Shown here piece by piece: positions 1 to 28,201 of a DNA stretch of 64,000 nt. This stretch comes from Diadema antillarum (lineage: Eukaryota): positions 62,001 to 126,000 of the forward strand of contig NW_027270908.1 of the NCBI RefSeq assembly GCF_040938485.1, written 5' to 3'. The notes beneath the pieces were generated by a model. That model had not been told where the DNA came from and did not search any database. It saw only the letters and a list, made by a program, of their open reading frames with translations. Positions within the stretch are counted from its first letter, which is position 1, and each line of letters begins with the position of its first letter. Both the position numbers and the translations under genes were made by a program.

Positions 1-149
1 ATTGCGCTTCAAAGAAGAAGAGGAGGAAATAATACACTAGTACATTTTACAAACATGACAGCAGGGAAGGGGAAAAAACAAATACATACTAGTTGAGGAA
101 CATAATTTTTTGTTGTGGATTTTACATTATGGATTACAGTTATGTAATC

Positions 150-275
150 CTCAGTGTGACAAGAACAAATTACGTTTGGTTTGACTGTTTCTGTAGATGA
201 CAGTTGGTGTACCGGAATGTTATGTTGATTCCACAGTCTTGGTCCCATAAGGGAGAAAGCACGATCCCAATCCAT
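150..275 (-). pseudogene. Degenerate 3' fragment of an L2/CR1-type LINE ORF2
   Basis: DRAFSLMGPRLWN resembles the conserved C-terminal xRAFSxxxPxLWN motif of L2/CR1-group RTs. Confidence 0.45.
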
Positions 276-557
276 GTTTTATTTTGGATGTTTGTTCGTA
301 ACAGTGCATCGGAAAAAAAAAGCAGCAGGTATGAATATTTCAACCGTTAAAGTTTTGTGACATCTTTATTTGGAAGATTACAAAACAGCGAATTCGAAAA
401 ATCCAAATGAGAAGATGAAAAGCATGAAAAAACATTTCAGCTGTAGTTTCAGACAGAAACTTTCTTATAAGATTTAAACTTATTCCTACTGCAACCCTTT
501 TATTCCCGATTGATTCCTTCCTCTTGTCAGAGTCTCTTTCATACAGCCCTTTTTCAC

Positions 558-592
<35 letters not shown>

Positions 593-829
593 TATTATTT
601 TGTTTTTATATGTGCATATATATAATAATATTGTGTATATATAATCATATATATCATGTACTAGTATATATTATATTCTACATTATATATATGCATATGC
701 ATGCATATCAACATATGCATACATCTGTCCTTTAGGATTTTTTGCTTTTCCCCTTTTTTCATATATAACTACTATTATCATAATTATTACTATTATCAAT
801 ATTATTATCATTATTATTATTTTACATAT

Positions 830-1350
830 ACTTTGAAATGTTTGGTAACTTGAATTTGTTGGTTGACTCTCACTTTCATTTTGTTGCCTCTTCTTGGTAC
901 ACCAGGTTAGGGCTCGCTGCTTGCTCAGCCTCCCCCCCCCCCCCTTATGCTGTTGCTACATTTCACTCTTTTCCTTTCTTTATCCCTCTGTTGTTCCTTA
1001 TCTTGTTTGACTTTGCCTCCCTATTCATCCTTATATCCTTCTCATGGTCCTCTGGATCATCACTGACCCTCCTCTGCTTTTGTCTGTCCCCCCTCCTGCT
1101 TTAATTACCCTCCCTTCATGCCCTTTACCTGTTGGGCTCCTTGCCCAAGACCTCCAACCCGTCCCTTTTGTTATCTATGTACTGTGTCCCTAGCCCTCCC
1201 TGACTGTTCTTGTTGTGTGTAGTCCTTATGTGATTGCTTGCCCTGTCTGTTTGTCATTTTGCCTCTGACGAAGATTCTGCTAGGATTGAAAGCTCAGGCC
1301 CCTTTTGACTCCATTTTTACTCCATGGCTCACTACTATTGGATAAGTAGT
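830..1350 (+). mobile_element. Penelope-like element terminal remnant
   Basis: Pyrimidine-rich tract ending in the CTGACGAAG..GAAAGCTC hammerhead motif typical of PLE termini. No coding remnant seen; boundaries are approximate. Confidence 0.5.
1261..1299 (+). ncRNA. Minimal type I hammerhead ribozyme of Penelope-like type
   Basis: GCCT-CTGACGA-A-GATTCT(GCT)AGGATT-GAAA-GC-TC-AGGC. Stem I GCCU/AGGC, conserved core, 6-bp stem II, palindromic AGCU stem III, predicted cleavage after C1295. Confidence 0.7.
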
Positions 1351-1629
1351 TTTCAGCAGCTTTTTTTTTTATCCGCAAAACTTTAATCACGCAACTGATA
1401 TCTAATATTCCTGATTTTTTTTTCACCTATGACTTCACAACTGGTACCGTCAGTAAACCTTTCAAAATAATGAAATAGTAAAGACCGGAAAGAAAACAGT
1501 AAATTATCATTCGTGCAGAGGGGAGAAGATGGGCTGAAACCGAACAAAGCTATATACTGCAACTTTGGCTGAAGCCTAACAGATTTTAACAAAATATCAC
1601 CCTCTAAAGTTTAAGATCGCAACTCCTGG

Positions 1630-2095
1630 TTTTACAATAATCATTATCAACAAACATGTCGGAAAAACAATAGCAGTGAGATTTGAATCAGTCATCTACT
1701 GCTTTCTGGGCAGCGACACCACCATCGGGCTATCACTTGTTGCTGGCAGTGACTCGATAAACTTGGAATAGATACCCAAGATCTGACTTTATTACGTTGA
1801 AATTCTTATTCAATTAAAACTGGTCTAAGGCGTATATATAGGACGACATTCTTTTTTACAATTTAATTACAATTTTACAATAATCATTATCAACAAACAT
1901 GTCGGAAAAACAATAGCAGTGAGATTTGAATCAGTCATCTACTGCTTTCTGGGCAGCGACACCACCATCGGGCTATCACTTGTTGCTGGCAGTGACTCGA
2001 TAAACTTGGAATAGATACCCAGGATCTGACTTTATTACGTTGAAATTCTTATTCAATTAAAACTGGTCTAAGGCGTATATATAGGACGACATTCT
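1630..2095. repeat. Near-perfect tandem duplication, period 243 bp
   Basis: 1630-1852 and 1873-2095; one substitution seen (CCCAAG/CCCAGG). Confidence 0.9.
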
Positions 2096-2541
2096 CTTTT
2101 TTTGGGGGGGGGGGATAAATTCCATTACACCACATCTTCTCTCCTCTGCGTGAATAAGTTCGTTTAATAACTACAGGAGCCAATAAATCAAATCAAATTA
2201 TGCTAGAAAATTAAAATATGTGGAATTATCACTTCATTTCCTTTATGTTGTTCAACAACTGACATCTCAAACTGTTGTAGTATACTCTAATCCAGCTATG
2301 GATTAAACTAAAGCTTTAAGAATTCATTATTTTTTTTATTAGTTACGGACTACATAATGTATCTTTGTTCCTAAAACTTCAATGTCTTCTCCTACGATAT
2401 ATTTGAAATCACTGCATCGGCATACATATACGAGGGTAAATTCCCATTTTGATAGAAAGGGCACTTGGTAAGCTTTCTTGAATTATCAGAGATAATGGAA
2501 CAGAAAATCATCAGAATCTTTATCTTCGAGATGGCTGTATA

Positions 2542-2694
2542 CAGGGGTAGATCCAGGAATTCCGTAAAGGGGGTGGGGGCGCTTTTACAAAATTAAAGGG
2601 GCACGCCCCCTTTTTTTCTTTTTATTTCTTTTGTTAAAAAAATGATAATAATAAGGGGGGCACTCCCGGTGTGCTCCCCCTGGATCCGCCACTG
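2542..2694. mobile_element. MITE, CAGGGGCGGATCCAGG-type TIR
   Basis: TIRs CAGGGGTAGATCCAGG / rc CAGTGGCGGATCCAGG, 5-bp TSD GTATA. Confidence 0.8.
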
Positions 2695-4788
2695 GTATAG
2701 CAACTTGTCTGCAACCAATTAAGGTTTTGATTTGTTGATAGTTTTTTTTTTCGTCTGTATCACATTTAATTCGATGTATAATTATCGTAAGGTGCTACAA
2801 TCATCAGTGTACATTCTTTTATCCTACATACTTTTACACACCTTATTTTCTATTATTAAAAAAGTGATGTTTGTATATTCTTGTCGAAAAATGAAATAAA
2901 AATAGAAAATTGAATTGAAATTTACTGTGCTCTATATGGCAGACGTCAAGCTGAACTCAGTCAAGCGAATTTCTCATCCACCTGAATACGATGTTAAAGT
3001 TGAAGTTGTGCTCTCATTGCTTTTTTCTTTGATGAACTTCCCAAAGAAGATGTTCCCCACATTAAGTTTATAAGGATTACTGTTGACAATAATCGCTTGG
3101 AAATTCCAAGTCGGTAATATGTGCATATAGACCCCACAGTTATACCTCTAAACACTGGTGTTGTAAAACACAGATAGTTTCACCGCCAATTACTCCGCTA
3201 CCCTGATTTCACTCTATTTACTTTATGGCTTGTTGACTTGGGGTAACATTCGTCATTTTTTCCAATGCTGCGATGCTTAGTAATAGACAGATTACGCCTC
3301 TTACAAAAACAACAGCAAACAAACAAACAGAGCAAAACAAAAACACACTCCGCATTATGTTTATCTCTTTCAGACGATCTCACACAGACTCACTTTTTTT
3401 TTCTTATTGAAAAAAAAATGAATGTTAAAAATGAAAGATTTATATTATTTCGACAAGGACCGTTTATGTTTATATCGGAGACAGCACTTCACCTGCCTTA
3501 CTTACTACGTTTCATACAAATCTGTCAATTCATAAACATCCTACTAGGCGACTTGGAGAATAAAATTTACCTTTGTTACTGGTCACTGTTAGCGTAAAAC
3601 ACGTTCATTATACATGATTGGCCAAGATTTCGTAAAGCACTGAGATGATGATCTTATTCGTACTTACAGGTGCATGTGTCTTTGCTCATGTATCTGTTTT
3701 GTTATATCCTGTTAGTAAGTCTCGTCTCTGCCGGATTTATACACTTTATTTAGTTTTATCGCCCCCCTAAACAATATGGCATATTTTTGAATACATGATT
3801 AATTAGCTCAATGATTCTGTTTCAGTTTCAGTAAGTTTTATTTCTCCACTTGTATAAAAAATAGGTATGACAATATCAAACATATTATTCACAAGTCATG
3901 AAAATATAAACAAGAGTTCACATCACAAATATACAATCATGTAAAATAATACATATATTTCACAGCAAATCTAAATCTTTAAATATAGGTGGAGGAGACC
4001 GTTATCAATAAGCGAATCGCTTGACTTGGACAACGGCCTAAAAAATAATTAAGTAACGTACAGAATTTGGTGACCACGCAACTTTGTTTTGTTGGGGTTG
4101 TTTTTAATGTATGTATATTGACTGGAGGAACTCACAATCTTCAAGCTTCATTTTTTAGTGGGTCCCAATCTCACTCCAAAACTTATAGTTATCAATCACT
4201 GAAATAATGTCTCACTTCTTAATTCTCATCAAATGTATGATATACCCTGCTATCCTATCATACTCATTTTTTATTTTTTTCCCTTTTTATTAACATTGTA
4301 CGTTTGTGCTATTTATTATGTTGCAGATGGAGAAAAATAAATCTGAACTTGAACTTTAATTGCTGCTCATCGTGCACCTTCGGTTGATTTTGAGTTCCTC
4401 TCTATAACATTATCTGAATTCACTTACGCGTTGTGTAAGAAAATTACTATCAAACATACTCTGCTTTTTTTTCACATCTCTTGTCTGTTCCGGAAATTTC
4501 GTATACCATCACTCTTCTACCACGCAACACATACTGCACTTGTTTGGTCGCTTCCCTGTTAATGGGAATGTATTGTTTTTAAACACATGCACGTTCTTCG
4601 TGGACCTGTATCATTTGTATTTTTGTTTGCCAAGGTGAAGTAAAACAAGGAATAGTTCGAATGTTCTCAATGACTTTTGACGAGTTTTATAGGAATTAGA
4701 TATCACACACTGTTATGGTCTTGTTACTACGTAAACCTTTATGGACCGCTTGAATGAATTTAAATGCAGACAAACAACACAAACTTAC

Positions 4789-5770
4789 CCGCATCAACAT
4801 CCAAAGCAGTTATTGTCATGAAACTGGAGGAAATAAGGCTGTTTTCTTCAATTTCTCCTTCATAATGTGATGAAGCAAAAACAGGCGGGTTATCGTTTAT
4901 GTCTTGAATGAAAATTTGAATGATTGCCCTGGACTGCTGGGGGATATCTCCATGGTCACTGGCAGTCACAGTTAATGTATAGTGGGACACTGTTTCACGG
5001 TCTAGCTGCAAGCGGGTGTGTACCTCTCCTGAATTTTCATTGATTTCAAACTCAGGTACATCATCCATGCTGTAGCTTATTTCAGCGTTGGAACCCGCAT
5101 CACCATCGGAGGCCGAAACTTGAACAACAACATTGCCAATGGGAACAGATTCACTAACGAACGCACTGTAAGTCGAGTTTTGGAAAATAGGTGCGTCATT
5201 CCTTGTATCTGTAATCTGACTCGTTATATTTACAGGGATGGGCTGCTCAAATATGGGGGTGTGGTCATTGCGATCGTCAACATAAACGGTCAGGTGGGTG
5301 GTGGTAGCTTTTGGTGGTGTGCCGTGGTCAGTCGCAGTGAGACGAAATGTGTGGGATTCTATCGTTTCTCTGTCGAGAGCCATTGTCGTCACTATCAGAC
5401 CTGTGTCTGGATTGATGTCAAACATGGCTCCACTCCGAGCATCCGATTGAGCCGTCATGCTGTAGGTGAGCCGGCCGTTGTCGCCATCATCATTGTCGGT
5501 TGCCGTGATCGTTGTCACAACATACCCAGGATCCTCATTTTCGGGAACTCTTCGTACATACAACATGCTGTCAAACGAGGGGTTTGTATTTTGGACTTGT
5601 CGTCTGTATCGGTACGAAACAAGTTTACTATGACCAGACATCTCCCAAAGTGGCCTCACTCTTGTTTGACTTGTACTTTGTCTAAAATGTCCCACATGGA
5701 CATTGAAGGTGGCAAAAACTTCGCCATGTAGAATGGTAGCAACTACCACCAAACCGAACAGGAACAACAT
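4789..5770 (-). CDS. Inverted paralogous copy of CELSR-like exon 1 (signal peptide, RYRR, EC1, EC6, start of EC7); downstream exons not in window
   Basis: ATG at 5770 (MLFLFGLVVVATILHGEVFA). 982-nt open exon ending in a phase-1 donor G|GTAAG at 4788, the same position as the + copy. About 84% aa identity to the + copy over the mature part (hand count 43/271 differences). Read-through gives a stop at 4760 (336 aa). Confidence 0.85.
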
Positions 5771-6412
5771 CACGACTCCTGTTAGAAGCTCCCAAACACT
5801 AAAAATCAGTTTGTATAGTAAACACAGTATTAGTTGCCTGCAACAAATGTCGCACAATTAGAACGATGGAGTCAATTATGATGGTAGGCCTACCTTGTTT
5901 TCAAACTGGGCACGCACACACTTGATAAAATCAGAAAGAGATTGTGGAGAGAGAGATTGGCTCTAAATAGAAGAGGTAATCTGATAGGTAGGCTCCGCCC
6001 ACAAAGTTCTTCCAAACTCGCCCATTGGCTCAAATCAAGCCTGAAGTTTGTAAGAGACGGCTGTACGCTCTCCTGTGATTTGTCGGTGTCACGTTCTCTT
6101 GGTGCGCCCCCATAGAGTCGTCTGCAGAGCAGACCGGCGGAGGAAAGAGACTTTCGCCTACCAGATACAGCTTGCACTTGCGTCACCTGTGACAAGTTTT
6201 AAAGCGGAATTTCGTGATAGCAGGCTGCTCAAAAGCCTTGGAAGACGAAACGCGTTGCTTTCAATTCCAGTTTGAAGAACTGACTTACTTTGTCGGAACA
6301 TTTCGATCAGTGAGATGACCAAATAATAATATTGTGTGACGCTTGCTGGAGGCCACGGATGCTGCCGAACATCAACTAAAGTCAAGTGGAAGAAAATTCA
6401 TCGGGAACCGTG
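5771..6412. promoter_or_regulatory. Candidate bidirectional promoter/5' UTRs of the two CELSR-like exon-1 copies
   Basis: 642 nt between divergent ATGs; ATTGG boxes at 5956 and 6024, GC box GGCTCCGCCC at 5991-6000. Confidence 0.5.
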
Positions 6413-7758
6413 ATGTCGTATCTGTTTACTTTGTTGGTGATTGCTGCCATTTTACATGGCGAAGTTTTTGCAGCCGTTAACGTTCATGCGGCAGATTTTA
6501 GACAGAGTACAACTAGAAGTCAGAAGAGGACAATCTTGTCTGGCAAAACTGTTTCTCATCGATACAGACGACAAGTCCAAAATACCAACCCTTCATTTGA
6601 CAGCATGATGTATGTAGGAAGAGTTCCTGAAAACGAGGGTCCAGGATACATTGTGACAACGATCACGGCAACCGACAATGATGATGGCGACAACGGGCGG
6701 CTCACCTACAGCATGACGGCTCAATCGGATGCTCGGAGTGGAGCCATGTTTGACATCAATCCAAATACAGGTTTGATAGTGACGACAATGGCTCTCGACA
6801 GAGAAACGATAGAGTCTCATACATTTCGTCTCACTGCCACTGACCACGGCACACCACCAAAATCTGCCACCACCAACCTGACCATTCATGTGGATGATCG
6901 CAATGACCACAACCCCATATTTGAGCAGCCCATCCCTGTAAATATAACGAGTCAGGTTACAGATACAAGGAGTGTCGCACCTATTTTCCAAAACTCGACT
7001 TACAGTGTTTTCGTCAGTGAATCTGTTCCCGTTGGCCATGTTGTTGTTCAAGTTTCAGCCTCCGATGGTGATGCGGGATCCAATGCTGCAATAAGCTTCA
7101 GCATGGATGATATACCGGAGTTTGAAATCAATGAACATTCAGGAGAAGTACACACCCGTTTGCAGCTGGACCGTGAAACAGTGTCTCACTATGTATTAAC
7201 TGTAACTGCAACTTGCCATGGAGATATTCCCCAGCAGTCCAGAGCACTCCTTCAAATTTCCATTGAAGATATCAATGATAATCCACCTATCTTTCCTACA
7301 TCTCATTATAAAGGAGAAATTGAAGAAATCTGCCCTCTTTACTCTACTCTGCTGACAATATCTGCTTTGGATGCTGATACAGGTAAATTTCTGTTGTTTG
7401 CATTAGATTTTTACGATAATTTGGATTTTGACTCAGAAGATTGATTCCCATCGCTTTGAAGGCAGCTTTGTAGTACTTCTTGTTTGTTTGTTTGCTTGTT
7501 ATTTTTTCTTTTAAAAAAAGAAAAAGTTTTTGTATGTATAGGTATGGAGTGGGGAAGACACATCATAGATGAAATAATGATCCAAACTTTGATTTGACCC
7601 TAAAAATGGCCTATTTTTTTAATGTCATGATATTGGCACGCACATACAACATACAGACTGAAATAAAAAGGAAGCTAGTAGGCCTATGTGGATTTACTTC
7701 AAATGAAACAATATCTTTTTCAGATTTAATTCCCTACAAATAATGTACTCTTCAGTGA

Positions 7759-7795
<37 letters not shown>

Positions 7796-10700
7796 TCTTC
7801 TCTTTTATTATTATTATTTTTTTTCAGGATCAAATGGTGAAGTCGGGTATACTTTTGAAGGGGGGTCTGATGCAGATGGGCGGTTTGTCATAGATGAGAT
7901 GTCCGGCACTGTTCGTGTTGCTTCATTGCTGGACCGCGAGTCAGTGGCTGCATATGACTTGGTGGCATATGCTTATGACCGAGGTGTTCCTTCCTTGAGA
8001 ACGGCAGTGCCGATCTCCGTGGAGATCCTCGATGTCAATGACAATCCACCATCATTTACCCGGAAGGAGTACTTCTTCACAGTCAAGGAGAATCGTGTTC
8101 CAGGGGAATGGGTGGGTGAAGTGACTGCCCTTGATCCGGACTCCCTAGATAATGGCCATATCAGCTACACCATCTTGGATGAAGATCTTTTCCCTTTTGA
8201 GATACATTATGCGTCCGGGATGATCACTACACTGGAAATACTTGACTATGAATCTCGCAGAGAGTATGAGCTTGTCATTCTCGCTATCAATGTACCATAT
8301 TTTGCTGATGTGATCGTTCACATCGGTGTGACGGATTACAATGATAATATGCCTATTCTGAATGACTTTGAGATATTTTTGAATAGCTATGAGGGTACCT
8401 TTTATGAAGGTGATGTCGCAAAGGTACCTGCAACAGATCCTGACATTTCAGATGTGCTGTGGTACTCCATTATACGCGGAAATGACTACAATCATCTAAT
8501 CTTGAATGAATCGACTGGTGGAATAAGGCTTCACCGGTTTCTCCGGAGACGCCTCTTTATTTTACCACAGACTACTGAGTTCATAGTAAAAGCATCTGGT
8601 AAGGACTATCTTTACATTGATTTTTTTTTTGTGCGTGTATGTGTGTGTTAGTGAAATTCTATGATTAGCTGATCACTATATTTCGCAGATTTTCTCTAAA
8701 CAGGGCACTTCTATATGATGCAATAATTGCATGGTATATATCCATTAGATTCATACTGACAACCAATGCAGAAAAAATAAAGCTCACCTTTGATTTTCTT
8801 TGAGAACAAGATTTTGCCCATGGTTCTAAGTTCATACAATACCATTCTGCAGATGTGTTATTTAACTTCAACTGAATAAGAAAATGTAGAAAATATTGGA
8901 ATAACCTCAGCAATGCCAATATGCTTTGATGCTCTTTTCATTTACAGTAGTGAAAATGTTATCTCCATTTCATCTTTTCTTTGTTCATTTATAGACGGAA
9001 TAAATGTAGTGACAGCACTTGGCACGTTCCACGTGTTCTTAGTGACTGCTGACATGCTCGCCAACAGTGTGACGGTTCACATGGAGGGCATTCAGTCCAG
9101 CGAGTTCCTGTCCTCAAAGTTGGTCCACTTCACTGAAACCATGGAGAGGATCATCCCTACACACCGGGACTTCATCCATGTCTTTGGCGTCCAGTCGGAA
9201 GGCCCTGGACTCCTGAGCGTCACCTTTGCGGCACAGCGCCCCGACGGCACTTTCTTCACCTCTCAGCACCTCCAAGAAAGGATATACGTCAAACGAAACC
9301 AGCTCTCCTCGGCGCTTGGCGCCACCGTTCTGCCGTTCAGTGACGACCTCTGTCTGCAGGAGATATGCAGTGGCTTCCACCAGTGCGTGGCAACGGTCAG
9401 CTCCTGGACTCCAGGTGAGGTCATTGCCACTGCAACGGTGATCTTCCATTCCGTCCTTCCCGAGATCCTCTACAGTTGCGTCTGTCCTCCAGGGTATACA
9501 GGAAACTACTGCCTCACAGAGGTTAACTTCTGCTACTCGAGCCCTTGCGCCAATGGAGGTACCTGTATTCAGAAAGAGCAGGGGTACACTTGCTTGTGCC
9601 AAGATGGATTTACAGGTAGGCTACAGAATATATGCATACTCAAAATGTGTGCCATTCATTAGGAAGTCTTTTATTGTGTGTGTGTGGAGGGTGAGGGGGT
9701 TGGAAGTGGGAAGCGAAGATGAGAGAATAGAAAAATTTGAATGGAAAATTAAAAAGAAATGTATTGTAAAGCATTACATTTTCAAGACCATGATTCAGGC
9801 CTCTTTCTGGAGAGTTCTTTATTATGTCCCATGAGGTACATAATTATAATGTACAAACATTGACCATTGTTGAAGTTTTGCAATGTCTACGAGGTGTCTA
9901 AAATGGAATTTGATTTATAGATGTCTTCACATACTTGAGTATGTATTTCAGTCACTGAAGATTTTCCAAGGATAAAGGCACTCGATGGGATCCAAACCAG
10001 GGCTGGCGGAGCGTTTTCAAAAGGTGGGGGCCACTTCCGGGTTTCATGAGCTAACAAAAAAAAAAAAAAAAGCCTTCAGCGCAACTTCTGGTGGCACTTC
10101 TAGGTTTCTTCTGCTGAGAAGCCACAACAACAACAGCAACAACAACAACAACAACAAAAAAGGTCTTCAACCCCCCTCCCCCCCAAAAAAATAACCTTAC
10201 TGCGCTCACACTTCAAGGTCTATATTTATTTTTTGAGTGCCACTTATGCACTTCCGGGGTAAAAAAAGTGGGGGTGGGGGAGGGCCCAAAGTGGTGACAC
10301 CTTATGTATTCCTTTGTATGGTGCAAAGGGGCCTAAGCGCCCCCCCCCCCCCCCCCGGCATCCCCGGTTTCGCCGGCCATGCAAACTTGGGACCTGTAAT
10401 TGAAAAGTCAGGAGTCTCATCAACTATGCTGCAGTGCCCCCACAAAATTTATTCACAAATATTAGATGGACTCCTCATATATTGTGTTATCACAAACACA
10501 CTCGCACACACGCACACATTTCTAAAATTTGCCTTTGCCATCTGTAACAAATGGTACATTTCATATGATAATGGTGGATGATTATTTTTTTGTTGCAAGT
10601 GAGTAATGGGAGTGAGTATATTATGTTGTAGATTTTGATCTCATTTGGTAGATTCAACTGAGTTACCATACATCTAGTAACATGCTAACTGTTTTCAGAC

Positions 10701-25700: not shown

Positions 25701-28201
25701 TCAGTGGTGCAAGGTCACGTAATAAAATGTATAGAGCTTCTTCAATAATGTAATGTACAACAACACAGGAAAAGTCAGAGCAGCAACTCCTGATAACATT
25801 TGCAAAAATTTGATTCTTTGAATTTAAAAAATTGGGAGCATTTTCAACTTATTTTTCAGGTCATTTTGGCCCTGAATGCTTGTCAGCGTGCGAACTGGGT
25901 GCATGCCAGCACGGCTCCACCTGTGACCTTTCTCCGGAGACGGATCTTGGCTACAGCTGCACCTGCTCGGAGCGTTTCTATGGCGACCACTGCCAGCACA
26001 TGGTGGAGGAGTGCCCAGATGACTGGTGGGGATACCCGGTCTGCGGCCCCTGCGAGTGTGATGAGGAGATGGGGTTTGACCCCGCTTGCGACATGACCAC
26101 AGGGGAATGCCACTGCCAGGTGAGGACCAGGAGACTGGGACCTGGAACTCTGATTGTAGATTAGAATATTGGATTTTACAAAAAGTCCTCTTTTTTCTCC
26201 TTTAAAAATAAAAAGATTTTGAAATGCATGTTGTAGCCTATCTAGATCATATGATTTTGTTGAAATGTCTCACACTTGCATTATCTAAAGCCAAACAACA
26301 AAGCTGTTTTGTGACTTCTTTCTCAGTCTAAGAATTTGGTACTGTCAAATGTATGAGGTTCCATTTCTGTTTGTTATCAGGTATAAGTACAAAAGGAGTA
26401 TTATGCTATTCTGGCTATTTTTCTGATTAGTATAAGATTAGAAGTGCAAAAATGTTTATTGACAATATTACTGAAAAGGAAATGTTTCGTAATCATAATT
26501 ACTGTTGCTGTCCCCTACTTCTGGAACGGTATCCTTTTATTTGATTTTTTTTTTTTATCATGTGCTTGTTAAGCTAAAAATGACCTTTCTTGGATGTGAA
26601 GGCATTAGCAAACCATGAGGAAGAGAAAAGATGACCAAAAAAAAAAAAAAAATGAAACCAAACCACTCAAACTTCCTGCATCGTATACCCATGGATATCT
26701 TACACCAATTAAAATTCCCTTGGTATATATTATCAAGTGTTATCTCATTATTGTCAGATTTCAATGAAAGCGGTCTTGCATCTGACTCCTTCCACACAGG
26801 AACACTTCTATCGCCCCTTAGACAGTGACACCTGTTACCCCTGTGACTGCTATGAGGTTGGATCCTCCAGTCAAGACTGTGACCAACAGACCGGTCAGTG
26901 CTCCTGCAGGAGGGGGGTTAATGGCCGGCGATGCGATGCCTGTGATGACCCCCATGCAGAGGTCACAGCCAGTGGATGCGAAGGTAGTAACCTTGACCAG
27001 CTGAAACTATTTTCTTCTGGTTGATGTTCACTAAAAGAACAACTTTATGTTAGGATTTTTTAATGTGCTTTAAAAAAAAAAATTGCACATTAAATGATGT
27101 ACACCAAGGATTTTTTTTTTGAACAGGGGTCCATTTCAAGAAAGTCTTATGAGAGATGTTTCCTTCATATGACACAATTATGAGAGACTTCATGAAATGG
27201 ATTTACTTTTCTATATTGCTACATATGAGCAACCTCTGAGGTTAATGTAAAGACTTTTTTGCGATTACTTCATGAAACGAACCCGTGGTAGATTAGAAAG
27301 TTTGTTTACAATACCATCATCACTCAGTACTATAGAATACAGATAGAGATATATTTTGTAGCACTTGTTTATAAGATGTTTTCATGTTTTGAGTAATGAT
27401 ATCACATTCTAGGACTCTGGCTGTGAATCTGTAGCATTCCAAGCACACACATGCAAATACAAGCACACATTATGCCCTCAAAACCACATGAAAAATAAGA
27501 GAGAAATTTTGTTGTACAACAGTAATATATATCAGGTATATAAAAGACAATTGTACAAAACTAGTATATAAATATTTCCTTTTGCTACAATCAGTAGACC
27601 TAAAGTACTAAACACTGGACATTACTGGTGTATACATAAAAAATTGCCATGAACACATGTACATCTGTAATTTTGACATTGTGTGTGTTGGCGTTTTCTT
27701 TGATACTAAATGCAGAAATTTGTGTGGCACATTAATTTTTGCATATTTTGTCTTATTTTTGGCTAGAGCGAATTCTAAAACCCATTAAAAAATCTAATAA
27801 TCTTATCTGCATGTGTTGAATGGATTGAAAATTGAGCAGCGCAAATTCATTAACCTGCAAATATGTTTTTGAGCCACTCAATGTGAAAATTTTTCCACGC
27901 AAAAATATTAATGTTTACAGAATGTTATCCAAATTATTGTCCTTACAATACTAACTGTATATTTCACGTATATAACTGATTCTCTCTCTCTCTCTTCCCC
28001 TCCTCAGTTATCCATGGATTCTGTCCCAAAAACTTTGATGAGGGTCTCTGGTGGCCGAGAACCCAATGGGGCGGGACAGCGACTGTAGACTGCCCAGTGG
28101 GGAGCTACGGCACTGCTACTGCTACACGGTCGTGCGACTTTGAAAAAAGATGGCAGATGCCAGACCTATTGAACTGTACCTTGGAATACATGTATAAGTA
28201 G
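6413..28201 (+). CDS. CELSR: Flamingo/CELSR-derived cadherin-EGF-LamG protein, 14 exons, 1454 aa, lacking EC2-5 and lacking GAIN/7TM
   Basis: Hand-spliced exons, all GT-AG with matching phases: 6413-7382, 7828-8598, 8995-9615, 12319-12490, 12876-13080, 13387-13496, 15118-15413, 16437-16600, 23594-23740, 24208-24318, 25008-25167, 25860-26119, 26800-26983, 28008-28201 (total 4365 nt, TAG at 28199-28201). Segments are collinear with vertebrate CELSR as I recall it, e.g. LQERIYVKRNQL..LPFSDDLC, SFATRKPSGMIFYNG..HDFIALE, LDLTGPFFLG, CPDDWWGYPVCGPCEC, CPKNFDEGLWWPRTQWG. The symbol denotes family, not 1:1 orthology. Confidence 0.9.
9998..10381. mobile_element. MITE in CELSR-like intron 3
   Basis: Imperfect TIRs CAGGGCTGGCGGA / rc CATGGCCGGCGAA, 5-bp TSD CAAAC. 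Confidence 0.7.
13570..13948 (-). mobile_element. tRNA-derived SINE, probably Deu/Nin-domain type
   Basis: Head GGGCGGTGAGTTGGTTCAGTCGG (A box) and GGTTCAAACC (B box). The central GTCCCTCGGATAGGACATAAAACGGAGG..GCACGTAAAAGATC resembles the Deu domain as I recall it. (AAAC)n tail. Confidence 0.8.
17801..23174 (+). mobile_element. Intact Ty3/Gypsy (Mag/SURL-type) LTR retrotransposon
   Basis: 226-bp LTRs at 17801-18026 and 22949-23174, TG..CA, identical by eye. 5-bp TSD CCGCC. PBS TGGTGTCAGA at 18027 (tRNA-Leu-like). Polypurine tract AAAGAAAGGGAGA just before the 3' LTR. Confidence 0.96.
18681..22586 (+). CDS. Gag-Pol polyprotein of the Gypsy element (single ORF)
   Basis: Double CCHC knuckle (CGRCGNRHAMYSC..CKKCGKMNHFAKC), protease LDTGA, RT MMDD, RNase H DASKNGLGAVL/YAQIEKE/TDHKPL, integrase HHCC plus D-D-E (ADLL, TDNGPQF, NGQAE). 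First ATG at 18681. Confidence 0.95.
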   Translation: MANLTQPAPLDLRGNLSENWKRFKQRFTLYNVASGMSRKDDKAQTSMLLHVIGDAALDIYNTFTFAEGDEMKLEKVLEQFEKYCTPKKNVTYERHKFFTRSQGVSENIDQYVTELRNRAQSCEFGELTDGLIRDQVICGITDGGLRERLLREDDLTLQKALQICRAAEITRAQAQELGSKADVSVPVDALNKKKKAVNPGKRSGPPRWKQKSQSQSHGQNSQACGRCGNRHAMYSCPAQGKVCKKCGKMNHFAKCCKSRVQVNELQSNSKDESFLVDVVESQESCDEWKVNLIVNERQVLFKLDTGAQTNLLPESVYQTLKPKPKLSSANVKLTGYSGVEIPVKGRCFVQVKHKNLTENMSFLVTPGNRQPLLGLQACDKLKLVKRVLNVAKNTHDEKMSVEDYEDVFEGLGCVPGKHHITVTENARPVQHACRKVPFPMREKLKEELDKMERMNVIEPVDTPTDWVSSLVIVQKKTGQLRVCLDPRDLNRAVKREHFQLPSRAEITAQFAGAKYFSKLDASSGFWQIQLDDESSRLCTFITPFGRYRFLRLPFGICSAPEVYHKIVHQLFAHIPGVNTMMDDIIVWGATQEEHDLRLKEVLETARKNNLKLNREKCEFRVNKLTFIGDVISDQGVQPDPKKVAAIQNMERPQCKQDVQRFLGMINYQGKFIADLSTKSEPLRSLLEKRNEWVWTDAQEHAWQELKKALSTEPVLHFYDCAKPTKLSADASKNGLGAVLLQKHDQDWVPIAYASRAMTDAETRYAQIEKELLAITYSCERFHQYIYGRQVEVETDHKPLIPLFVKPLCDCPLRIQRLLIRVQRYDLKVSYTPGKYMYTADTLSRAVDPESKPDVMREEDIKVYVDAFVMNMPVTSNKRSQFVDETKKDTALQELLAVIRDGWPERKQQCPVSVREYWNIRSELSEAQGIIFKGSKIVVPATMRREMLQKIHEGHLGIEKCKRRARDVLYWPRINHDVAEMVQNCNACLTYQPKQQKESLQPHMVPDRPWQKVAADLLTLDNKEYLVIVDYFSQYIELCSLSTTTSRAVINSMKAVFARHGTPCELITDNGPQFSSREFQQFTAEWDFRHTTTSPYHPQSNGQAENAVKIVKNLMRKSKHSGQEVLRALQVYRSSPLECGKSPAELLFNRRIRTNLPMAEKLLDPQHINARSVKERKEGQKQKQKKHFDKHARDLPHLKVGDHVKLQDMNTGRWSQGGVIKKTLPHRSYLVQTETGEIRRRNRRHLRPDPRRGQDERQPAQRYDDDDDNVNAPMVDETTRNATSVKSTRSGRIVKPPIRLDL

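What the first reader, a model, noticed from the sequence alone, without database searches (positions are those of the whole stretch)
4789..7382. Head-to-head inverted duplicate of the large cadherin exon 1
Seen: two open exon-1 copies point away from each other, 642 nt apart. Homology runs from about 80 nt upstream of each ATG to about 25 nt into intron 1, with identical phase-1 donors. The + copy's exon 2 is 445 nt downstream, but no exon-2 homolog occurs in the 4.7 kb downstream of the - copy. Inference: either a divergent sister gene with a long first intron, or an orphan exon making a 336-aa secreted mini-cadherin by intron read-through. More speculatively, it could be a variable first exon used by trans-splicing or by recombination between the arms, loosely recalling protocadherin variable exons.
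Basis: partly seen in the sequence, partly recalled or inferred. Interest (0 to 1): 0.72.

Follow-up and report, generated by a model that had tools for sequence, protein, structure and literature searches.

The report
Spare inverted first exon of sea-urchin CELSR
In the sea urchin Diadema antillarum, an intact mirror-image copy of the first exon of a receptor-less Flamingo/CELSR-like gene lies just upstream of the full-length CELSR receptor gene; the copy appears to be kept by selection, and gene annotators already list it as a small gene, but no RNA data could be obtained to show what it is spliced to.

Summary
Two open copies of a roughly 325-codon cadherin first exon lie head to head: B at 4789-5770 (-) and C1 at 6413-7382 (+). 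Their ATGs are 642 nt apart, they are 87-89% identical in DNA and 79% in protein, and both end in phase-1 donors.

The genome is Diadema antillarum, and contig C90 holds the other haplotype. The context outside the window changes the reading:
- **Gene C (+):** a 1454-aa CELSR/Flamingo-like gene with no 7TM part.
- **Gene A (-):** the canonical CELSR, upstream of the window, with its own 974-codon first exon, very long introns and a 7TM hit.
- **Exon B:** a third, spare copy lying 5.5 kb upstream of A and pointing the same way.

B is open in both haplotypes and in D. setosum. RefSeq already models it as a stand-alone gene of 336, 293 and 314 aa. Substitutions specific to B give dN/dS of about 0.36, the same as for C1, and B keeps Ca-binding residues that C1 has lost.

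My best guess, at about 0.36, is that B is an alternative first exon of A. The rivals are a stand-alone mini-cadherin and a relic. No RNA data could be obtained. The scan reached the same reading earlier on the other haplotype (s1-229746, s1-229770).

The parts
4789..5770 (-). Exon B, the spare first exon. It encodes an ATG, a signal-peptide-like N-terminus, a short pro-region with an RYRR furin-type site, EC1, a 16-aa remnant linker, a second cadherin repeat (EC6-like), and the first ~27 residues of the next repeat. It ends at a phase-1 donor.
   Evidence: ORF. Two PF00028 domains. Open in both haplotypes and in D. setosum (XP_072174156.1). Substitutions specific to B are 9 synonymous and 11 nonsynonymous, omega about 0.36, p = 0.022 against neutrality.
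4760..4788 (-). The first 29 nt of the intron after B. They hold the donor G|GTAAGT, the eight read-through codons KFVLFVCI, and the stop used in the RefSeq 336-aa model.
   Evidence: About 30 nt here are homologous to the start of C intron 1. The start of A's intron 1 is also GTAAGTTTGT.
5771..6412 (.). The 642-nt spacer between the two ATGs, a candidate bidirectional promoter. The ~90 nt next to each ATG are homologous between the two sides.
   Evidence: GC 0.456 against about 0.38 nearby; CpG observed/expected 0.84; ATTGG at 5956 and 6024; a GC box at 5995; no TATA. Flank alignment. The promoter role is inferred and not tested.
6413..7382 (+). Exon 1 of gene C (C1), the receptor-less CELSR paralog XP_071495430.1 of 1454 aa. 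It is the partner arm of the inverted repeat.
   Evidence: The two haplotype alleles differ at 69 sites (27 synonymous, 42 nonsynonymous; omega 0.45).
7383..7827 (+). Intron 1 of gene C, 445 nt on this haplotype. The C90 haplotype carries about 1.7 kb extra here.
7828..8598 (+). Exon 2 of gene C, encoding EC7-EC9 and including the CELSR2-type ninth cadherin domain. Its only homologue in B's direction is exon 2 of gene A, outside the window at G000:C20:47601-48476 (-).
   Evidence: Pfam; tblastn; A exon 2.

Best explanation
Exon B is a partial inverted duplicate of the 5' end of gene C. It covers about 90 nt of upstream sequence, exon 1 and about 30 nt of intron.

The duplication arose before Diadema antillarum and D. 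setosum split. Since then B appears to have been kept as a coding exon by purifying selection.

Genes A and C lie head to head. The inverted copy therefore lies 5.5 kb upstream of the canonical CELSR/Flamingo receptor gene A, on A's strand. It has its own ATG, a signal-peptide-like N-terminus, and a strong donor in the same phase as A's exon-1 donor.

My most likely mechanism is as follows, and every step of it is inferred, not shown. B is transcribed outward from the CpG-rich 642-nt spacer it shares with gene C. As the cap-proximal donor, it splices to the acceptor of A exon 2, 18.3 kb downstream, skipping A exon 1, which has no acceptor. The result would be a CELSR isoform with a five-repeat ectodomain (EC1, EC6-EC9) in place of nine repeats. 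That is the same short architecture as the secreted paralog C.

Shown here: the anatomy, the open frame in two species and two haplotypes, the signs of selection, and the compatibility in phase and strand.

Not shown: transcription from the spacer, and any junction between B and A exon 2.
For: **Anatomy**
- The inverted repeat and the two open frames.
- A exon 1 lies at C20:58308-61277 (-). From its ATG it encodes a signal peptide, a pro-region of about 290 aa, RFRRQ, EC1-EC6, and the donor CAGG|GTAAGT in phase 1.
- A exon 2 lies at C20:47601-48476 (-), after a polypyrimidine/AG acceptor in phase 1.
- A continues to exons 3-5, laminin-EGF, HormR and a 7tm_2 hit on C90 and C1035. It is therefore the full receptor.

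**Selection on B**
- B is open in both haplotypes and in D. setosum.
- B-type residues at both ends of the exon are shared between the two species, so the copies are orthologous.
- Substitutions unique to B, with A as outgroup, are 9 synonymous and 11 nonsynonymous. Omega is about 0.36, p = 0.022, equal to the 11:13 found for C1.
- Polarised amino-acid changes number 11 on B against 23 on C1.
- The chance of no stop arising under neutral drift at the observed dS is about 0.03, before counting indels.
- B keeps Ca-binding residues (ASDHG, SASDGD) that the C1 alleles have lost (TATCHG/TATYHG, SVSGGD).
- The last 33 residues of B, which form only part of a cadherin repeat, are 31/33 identical between species. 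That makes most sense if an exon 2 completes the repeat.

**General knowledge (not tested here)**
- In clustered protocadherin genes the cap-proximal donor of an upstream first exon splices past downstream first exons that lack acceptors.
Against: - No RNA evidence of any kind was obtainable (no run listed).
- RefSeq used 12 RNA-seq runs from adult D. antillarum tissues (PMC13511894). It models B as a separate gene ending by read-through, not as an isoform of A.
- The D. setosum model joins B to a different 29-aa tail, for which I found no homologue in 126 kb here.
- Two of the three RefSeq models start at Met44 and lack the signal peptide.
- B's position and phase follow automatically from duplicating C1 next to a head-to-head paralog, so on their own they are not evidence of use.
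- Gene conversion with C1 and A can help keep an unused exon open.
- The counts behind the selection tests are small (20 substitutions).
Confidence: 0.36

Rival explanations
1. **Stand-alone mini-cadherin gene (the RefSeq reading).** B is transcribed from the spacer, is not spliced, and ends at the stop eight codons past the donor. The product is a 336-aa secreted protein with EC1, one more cadherin repeat and a dangling partial repeat. It might act as a soluble competitor or partner of CELSR or gene C through EC1.
For: - RefSeq models P0162 (336 aa, this contig) and XP_071485696.1 (293 aa, C90) both end ...DVDAG-KFVLFVCI.
- The ORF is under constraint.
- There is a signal-peptide-like N-terminus and a retained RYRR site.
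- AATAAA/ATTAAA hexamers lie 430-515 nt past the donor.
Against: - The product would end about 27 residues into a cadherin repeat, which cannot fold alone. Yet that stretch is the best-conserved part between species.
- The C-terminal tails differ completely between D. antillarum and D. setosum.
- A strong GTAAGT donor is retained.
- Two of the three models lack the signal peptide.
- Poly(A) hexamers are expected by chance in AT-rich intron sequence.
Confidence: 0.25
2. **Unused relic of an inverted partial duplication.** B has no function of its own. Its frame has stayed open through moderate age and repeated gene conversion from its functional partners C1 and A. Any transcripts are by-products of gene C's bidirectional promoter.
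For: - Concerted, species-specific sites in the middle of the arms show that conversion occurs.
- EC1 of B is closer to A at synonymous sites (dS 0.47) than C1 is (0.64-0.67).
- The 3' 600 nt of B that are identical between haplotypes reflect a shared haplotype block extending 3 kb into non-coding DNA, not selection.
- Two RefSeq models lack the signal peptide.
- No homologous downstream partner exon lies nearby.
- Gene C itself looks relaxed (allelic omega 0.45), and the C90 contig sequence has a frameshifting extra base in C exon 2. Matching C1's omega is therefore a weak benchmark.
Against: - Substitutions unique to B cannot come from conversion, and they still show omega about 0.36 (p = 0.022).
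- B and C differ by dS of about 0.3 (0.64-0.79 in the signal/pro region), yet there is no stop or frameshift in three sequences from two species.
- B is the more conservative copy (11 derived changes against 23) and keeps Ca-binding residues that C1 lost.
Confidence: 0.33
3. **Exotic use.** B would be a variable exon used by trans-splicing to gene C's exon 2, or by somatic or germline flipping of the spacer through recombination between the inverted arms.
For: Only the geometry: 1-kb inverted arms, 87-89% identical, 642-918 nt apart, plus evidence that the arms have exchanged sequence over evolutionary time.
Against: - The two haplotypes have the same orientation and are collinear through the arms and spacer.
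- The paralog-specific ends are stable across species.
- The exchange pattern is internal conversion tracts, not swapped promoter-proximal halves.
- No data point to trans-splicing.
Confidence: 0.02

Closest known systems
CELSR / Flamingo (ADGRC) adhesion GPCRs
   Same: B's sequence derives from the CELSR first exon. It has a signal peptide and EC1 plus a later cadherin repeat with canonical Ca-binding motifs. The neighbouring gene A has the full architecture: nine cadherin repeats, EGF/LamG, laminin-EGF, HormR and 7TM.
   Different: B alone encodes only about 2.3 cadherin repeats and nothing else. B and C1 lack EC2-EC5 and most of the pro-region of about 290 aa found in A. As far as I know, CELSR genes have not been described with alternative first exons of this kind.
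Clustered protocadherin variable first exons (vertebrates, and independently octopus)
   Same: Both involve a cadherin-coding first exon with its own start codon and possibly its own promoter, lying upstream of another first exon and of shared downstream exons. In both, cap-proximal donor choice would skip the downstream first exon.
   Different: Here there are only two candidate first exons (B and A exon 1), not a tandem array. B ends inside a cadherin repeat instead of encoding the whole ectodomain plus TM. B arose by inverted duplication from a different gene (C). No promoter-choice element or RNA evidence is known.
Partial (5'-end) gene duplicates and orphan-exon genes created by inverted or fold-back duplication
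   Same: A 1.1-kb segment holding the proximal upstream region, exon 1 and the start of the intron is copied head to head next to its source. Gene conversion occurs between the arms. RefSeq annotates the copy as a short 'X-like' protein.
   Different: Most such fragments decay. This one is open in two species, shows omega of about 0.36, and is more conservative than its source exon.
Bidirectional promoters of divergent gene pairs
   Same: The two ATGs are 642 nt apart on opposite strands. The spacer is CpG-rich and TATA-less, with CCAAT (as ATTGG) and GC boxes.
   Different: Here the two divergent units are copies of the same exon, and promoter activity in either direction has not been measured.

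Membership tests
Cadherin superfamily (extracellular cadherin repeats) | PF00028 cadherin domains above the gathering score | tested here: met
   B scores E 1.6e-45 with two stretches; C1 scores E 2.6e-43.
Cadherin superfamily (extracellular cadherin repeats) | Ca-binding motifs (xPExE, DxNDN, LDRE, DxGxP, DxDxGxN) | tested here: met
   Read from the alignments. B has PENE, DNDDG, LDRE, ATDHGTPP, DDRNDH, SASDGDAGSN, ASDHG and DINDN. C1 alleles have lost some of these (TATCHG/TATYHG, SVSGGD).
CELSR / ADGRC receptor | Nine cadherin repeats followed by EGF/LamG, laminin-EGF, HormR, GAIN and a 7TM (7tm_2) | tested here: not met
   B on its own has two repeats plus a fragment. Gene A meets the feature as far as tested: exons through HormR, and a 7tm_2 hit at C90:182166-182390. 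Gene C's model stops after HormR, and no 7tm_2 hit follows it.
Alternative first exon of gene A | Same strand as A and upstream of it, with its own ATG and signal sequence | tested here: met
   B's donor is at C20:66788/9. A's ATG is near C20:61220, and both are on the minus strand. B's N-terminus MLFLFGLVVVATILHGEVFA|TF aligns with the signal peptides of A and C. No SignalP run was available.
Alternative first exon of gene A | Donor present and in the same phase as A exon 1's donor, so that it is in frame with A exon 2 | tested here: met
   Both are phase 1: B GCGG|GTAAGT and A CAGG|GTAAGT. A exon 2 begins in phase 1.
Alternative first exon of gene A | Transcripts joining B to A exon 2 | not testable with these tools
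No protein in the searched length ranges joins B to other exons.
Clustered-protocadherin-type variable exon | Tandem array of many same-strand first exons, each encoding the whole ectodomain and TM segment | tested here: not met
   The genome holds only B, C1 and A exon 1 per haplotype. B and C1 are inverted relative to each other. B ends about 27 residues into a repeat and has no TM segment.
Decaying pseudo-exon (relic) | Disrupted frame or neutral substitution pattern (dN/dS about 1) | tested here: not met
   The frame is open in three sequences. Omega on the B lineage is about 0.36, p = 0.022. The sample is small and gene conversion confounds it, so this is a probabilistic result.

The most novel reading that the evidence does not exclude
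B is a working alternative promoter and first exon of the canonical CELSR/Flamingo receptor. It would give the receptor a short five-repeat ectodomain (EC1, EC6-EC9) that matches the ectodomain of the neighbouring secreted, receptor-less paralog C. The locus would then encode a matched pair, a short receptor isoform and a soluble partner or competitor, built by duplicating and inverting one exon. That would be a minimal, independently evolved 'variable first exon' arrangement in an adhesion GPCR.
Probability: 0.3. Interest if true: 0.6.

Novelty: new member of a known kind. Interest (0 to 1): 0.38.

Why it matters
CELSR/Flamingo is a core planar-cell-polarity and neuronal-wiring receptor that works through homophilic binding of its cadherin repeats. 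An alternative first exon that removes four of the nine repeats would be a simple natural way to retune that binding, especially beside a secreted paralog with the same short ectodomain. It would also be a clear case of a partial inverted duplication being recruited by the neighbouring paralog. If B is instead unused, the locus still shows how gene conversion and a head-to-head layout can keep an orphan exon looking functional. It would also be a caution about 'X-like' single-exon RefSeq models.

Tried and rejected
**RNA evidence**
- The look-up of sequencing runs (kind rna) on window 4700-5900 listed no run, so read laying could not be used.
- PMC13511894 names RNA-seq runs, but read laying accepts only ids from the look-up of sequencing runs, so I did not try them.

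**D. setosum DNA around the orthologues**
I therefore had no B orthologue DNA, no between-species dN/dS, and no view of the D. setosum upstream ATG.

**The 29-aa tail of the D. setosum model**
- tblastn against C20:1-126000 gave nothing better than E = 2.6.

**Homologues of C exons 3-14 within 58 kb downstream of B**
- None were found on this contig, which at first suggested that A is truncated.
- Whole-genome searches rejected that reading. They placed A's later exons 58 kb and more downstream, on C90 and C1035.

**Word-based protein searches (all three used)**
- No protein joins B to other exons, and no B- or C1-type short exon appears outside Diadema within the length ranges searched: 181-577, 544-1730 and 800-2545 aa.
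- Longer isoforms, and isoforms merged into 90% clusters, would have been missed.

**Identity of the two haplotypes in B's 3' 600 nt**
- I rejected this as evidence of selection. The identical block runs 3 kb into non-coding DNA.

**Similarity of B's last 33 residues to A**
- I compared this by eye with C1's similarity to A (17/33 against 16/33) and found no signal.

**Further fetching of C90**

**Steps not run**
- The large representative protein search and structure prediction, because neither would decide what B is spliced to.
Exons were searched one by one by reference.
Full report
**1.

The repeat finder reports inverted arms at 4771-5626 / 6545-7400 (856 nt, 89% complementary) and at 5671-5779 / 6404-6512 (79%).

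Both arms are open reading frames:
- **Exon B** runs on the minus strand from the ATG at 5770 to a donor after 4789 (327 codons plus 1 base).
- **Exon C1** runs on the plus strand from 6413 to 7382 (323 codons plus 1 base).

The two proteins are 79% identical. Each contains two Pfam cadherin domains.

- The ATGs are 642 nt apart.
- Homology extends about 85-90 nt upstream of each ATG.
- Homology extends about 30 nt into each intron.
- Both donors are phase 1 (G|GTAAGT in B, G|GTAAAT in C1).
- Exon 2 of the plus gene starts 445 nt downstream, at 7828.
- tblastn finds no exon-2 homologue in window 1-4788.

**2. Which genome, and is the arrangement real?**

The window is G000:C20:62001-126000. 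Protein look-ups return RefSeq proteins of Diadema antillarum on contigs of exactly the lengths of C20 and C90.

The published description of this 1.75-Gb assembly says it retains both haplotypes, with 84.4% duplicated BUSCOs (PMC13511894; preprint 10.64898/2026.05.24.727502).

C90 is collinear with C20 across the whole locus at 91-99% identity. It has the same orientation of both arms and the spacer. The inverted duplicate is therefore present in two independently assembled haplotypes, and there is no inversion polymorphism between them.

**3. The wider locus has three units, not two**

*Gene C (plus strand, window 6413-28195).*
- It is RefSeq XP_071495430.1, 1454 aa. The D. setosum orthologue is XP_072174166.1.
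- Its domain order is signal peptide, EC1, a remnant linker, four more cadherin repeats, the DE-cadherin-type Ig-like domain, EGF/LamG modules, laminin-EGF and HormR. The model then stops.
- No 7tm_2 hit follows it.

*Gene A (minus strand, upstream of the window).*
- Its own first exon lies at C20:58308-61277. From its ATG this exon encodes 974 residues: a signal peptide, a pro-region of about 290 aa, RFRRQ, and EC1-EC6. It ends at CAGG|GTAAGT in phase 1.
- Exon 2 (EC7-EC9) lies at C20:47601-48476.
- I first thought A was truncated, because no homologue of C exons 3-14 lies in the remaining 47 kb of the contig.
- Whole-genome searches then placed the later exons on C90. Exon 3 is 58 kb further on (C90:256632-257348). 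Exons 4 and 5 are near 217 kb and 213 kb. Laminin-EGF and HormR are at 189 kb and 188 kb. A 7tm_2 hit lies at C90:182166-182390. All are on the minus strand, and the same series appears on contig C1035, which I take to be the other haplotype's copy of this stretch.
- A is therefore the canonical nine-repeat CELSR/Flamingo receptor, with very long introns.
- Its exon-1 alleles differ at 37 sites, of which only 3 are nonsynonymous. That indicates strong constraint.
- The Lytechinus RefSeq orthologues stop after exon 2, at 1259-1301 aa. This may be because of the same long intron.

*Exon B.*
- It lies between the two genes. Its donor is 5.5 kb upstream of A's start codon and on A's strand.

That paralog exists, but it does not account for B, because A has its own first exon.

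**4. B is already annotated**

RefSeq lists B as a separate gene named 'cadherin EGF LAG seven-pass G-type receptor 2-like':

| Model | Where | Length | Start | End |
|---|---|---|---|---|
| P0162 | this contig (C20) | 336 aa | Met1 | ...DVDAG-KFVLFVCI (read-through) |
| XP_071485696.1 | C90 | 293 aa | Met44 | same read-through |
| XP_072174156.1 | D. setosum | 314 aa | Met44 | an unrelated 29-aa tail |

I found no homologue of that 29-aa tail in 126 kb of C20.

The D. antillarum annotation used 12 RNA-seq runs from adult tissues (PMC13511894). I cannot tell how much of these models rests on reads.

**5. History of the copies**

Aligning B and C1 from both haplotypes and both species gives three patterns:
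- The ends of the exon carry paralog-specific residues shared across species. Examples are the four-residue insertion around MSGHS, and PPVFASS...ISSSFMTITALDVDA in B against PPIFPTS...LYS.LLTI.ALDAD. in C1. The duplication therefore predates the species split.
- The middle carries species-specific residues shared by B and C1. These are gene-conversion tracts.
- Synonymous divergence between B and C1 is about 0.3 overall, and 0.64-0.79 in the signal/pro region.

A differs from both B and C1 at dS of about 0.9 in the last repeat. In EC1 the values are lower, 0.47 for B and 0.64-0.67 for C1. This suggests some past exchange with A.

Both B and C1 share the loss of most of the pro-region and of EC2-EC5. 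B was therefore copied from the short, C-type exon.

**6. Is B under selection?**

Points in favour:
- With A as outgroup, substitutions found only in B (both alleles) number 9 synonymous and 11 nonsynonymous. Omega is about 0.36, p = 0.022 against neutrality. The fixed C1 changes are 11 and 13, giving the same omega.
- Polarised amino-acid changes number 11 on B and 23 on C1.
- Random substitution at the per-lineage dS leaves the frame free of stops in only about 3% of simulations, before counting indels. Three B sequences from two species are open.
- B keeps Ca-binding aspartates that the C1 alleles have lost.

Caveats:
- The counts are small.
- Conversion from selected partners helps keep a frame open.
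- Gene C itself looks relaxed. Its allelic omega is 0.45, and the C90 contig sequence of its exon 2 has an extra T in a T-run that shifts the frame. That T may be an assembly error, since the preprint gives 11x depth.
- The perfect identity of the two B alleles over the 3' 600 nt is not evidence of selection. The haplotypes are identical from window 2000 to about 5390 and 5-10% divergent beyond that point.

**7. How it most likely works**

The spacer between the ATGs has GC 0.456 and CpG observed/expected 0.84. It has two ATGG-flanked CCAAT boxes in inverted form (ATTGG), one GC box and no TATA. That is the usual make-up of a bidirectional promoter. This is inference from general knowledge, not a test.

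If B is transcribed, its strong cap-proximal donor has one homologous, in-frame acceptor in cis, that of A exon 2. A exon 1 has no acceptor and would be skipped, as happens in clustered protocadherin genes (general knowledge).

The product would be a CELSR with EC1 and EC6-EC9. The last 33 residues of B form only the first two strands of a repeat. They are 31/33 identical between the species, which fits a need for an exon 2 to complete the repeat.

| Reading | Probability |
|---|---|
| Alternative first exon of A | about 0.36 |
| Stand-alone read-through product (the RefSeq reading) | about 0.25 |
| Unused relic kept open by conversion | about 0.33 |
| Trans-splicing or arm recombination | about 0.02 |

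**8. Comparison with known systems, and novelty**

B is a CELSR-derived cadherin fragment, not a CELSR receptor. It fails the defining features of protocadherin variable exons, because it is not part of a tandem array, does not encode a whole ectodomain and has no TM segment.

It is a well-preserved example of a known kind of feature: a partial inverted 5' duplicate, or orphan exon, possibly recruited as an alternative first exon. RefSeq already lists it as a predicted gene. I found no paper that discusses it.

Earlier notes from this scan on another piece of this genome, presumably the other haplotype (s1-229746, s1-229770), reached the same three-part reading and also had no RNA data. This report adds four things:
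- the lineage-specific selection tests;
- the orthology and conversion pattern between the two species;
- the haplotype-block caveat;
- the mapping of A's distal exons and 7TM hit.

**9. Limits**

- No RNA reads could be laid.

Noticed in passing
window 8365-8380 (gene C exon 2) vs G000:C90 around 340,000: The C90 haplotype has one extra T in a T-run inside gene C exon 2. This shifts the frame, and RefSeq flags that allele (XP_071485697.1) as LOW QUALITY PROTEIN. It could be a true broken allele or a homopolymer error in an assembly of about 11x depth.
   Followed up: partly
window 2000-5390 vs 5400-9600: The two haplotypes are virtually identical from window 2000 to about 5390 (4 mismatches in 3.4 kb) and then 5-10% divergent. 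The switch point lies inside exon B, so it marks a recombination or conversion boundary within the arm.
   Followed up: yes
window 7600-7800 (gene C intron 1): The C90 haplotype carries an insertion of about 1.7 kb in this 445-nt intron.
   Followed up: no
window 6413-7382: The two alleles of C1 differ at 69 of 970 sites (27 synonymous, 42 nonsynonymous; dS 0.13, omega 0.45). Both have lost canonical Ca-binding aspartates (TATCHG / TATYHG; SVSGGD on C90). Gene C's first exon therefore evolves faster than its spare copy B.
   Followed up: yes
window 28007-28195 and downstream to about 39500: Gene C's model ends right after the HormR domain. No long ORF and no 7tm_2 hit follow it, so C should be a secreted, receptor-less CELSR paralog. 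D. setosum has the same 1454-aa architecture.
   Followed up: partly
G000:C90:182166-329035 (-) and C1035:5089-79568 (+), outside the window: The canonical CELSR gene A spans more than 140 kb, with introns of about 10, 58 and 39 kb. RefSeq models of its Lytechinus orthologues stop after exon 2 (1259-1301 aa, with read-through tails). They may be truncated because of a similar long intron.
   Followed up: partly
window 6890-6990 and 5180-5280: Both B and C1 carry the same remnant linker, PIFEQP-IPVNITSQ(I/V)TDTR..AP. It joins the start of EC2 to the last strand of EC5 as found in A's exon 1. The EC2-EC5 deletion noted separately by the scan (s1-215215) therefore predates the B/C1 duplication.
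   Followed up: partly
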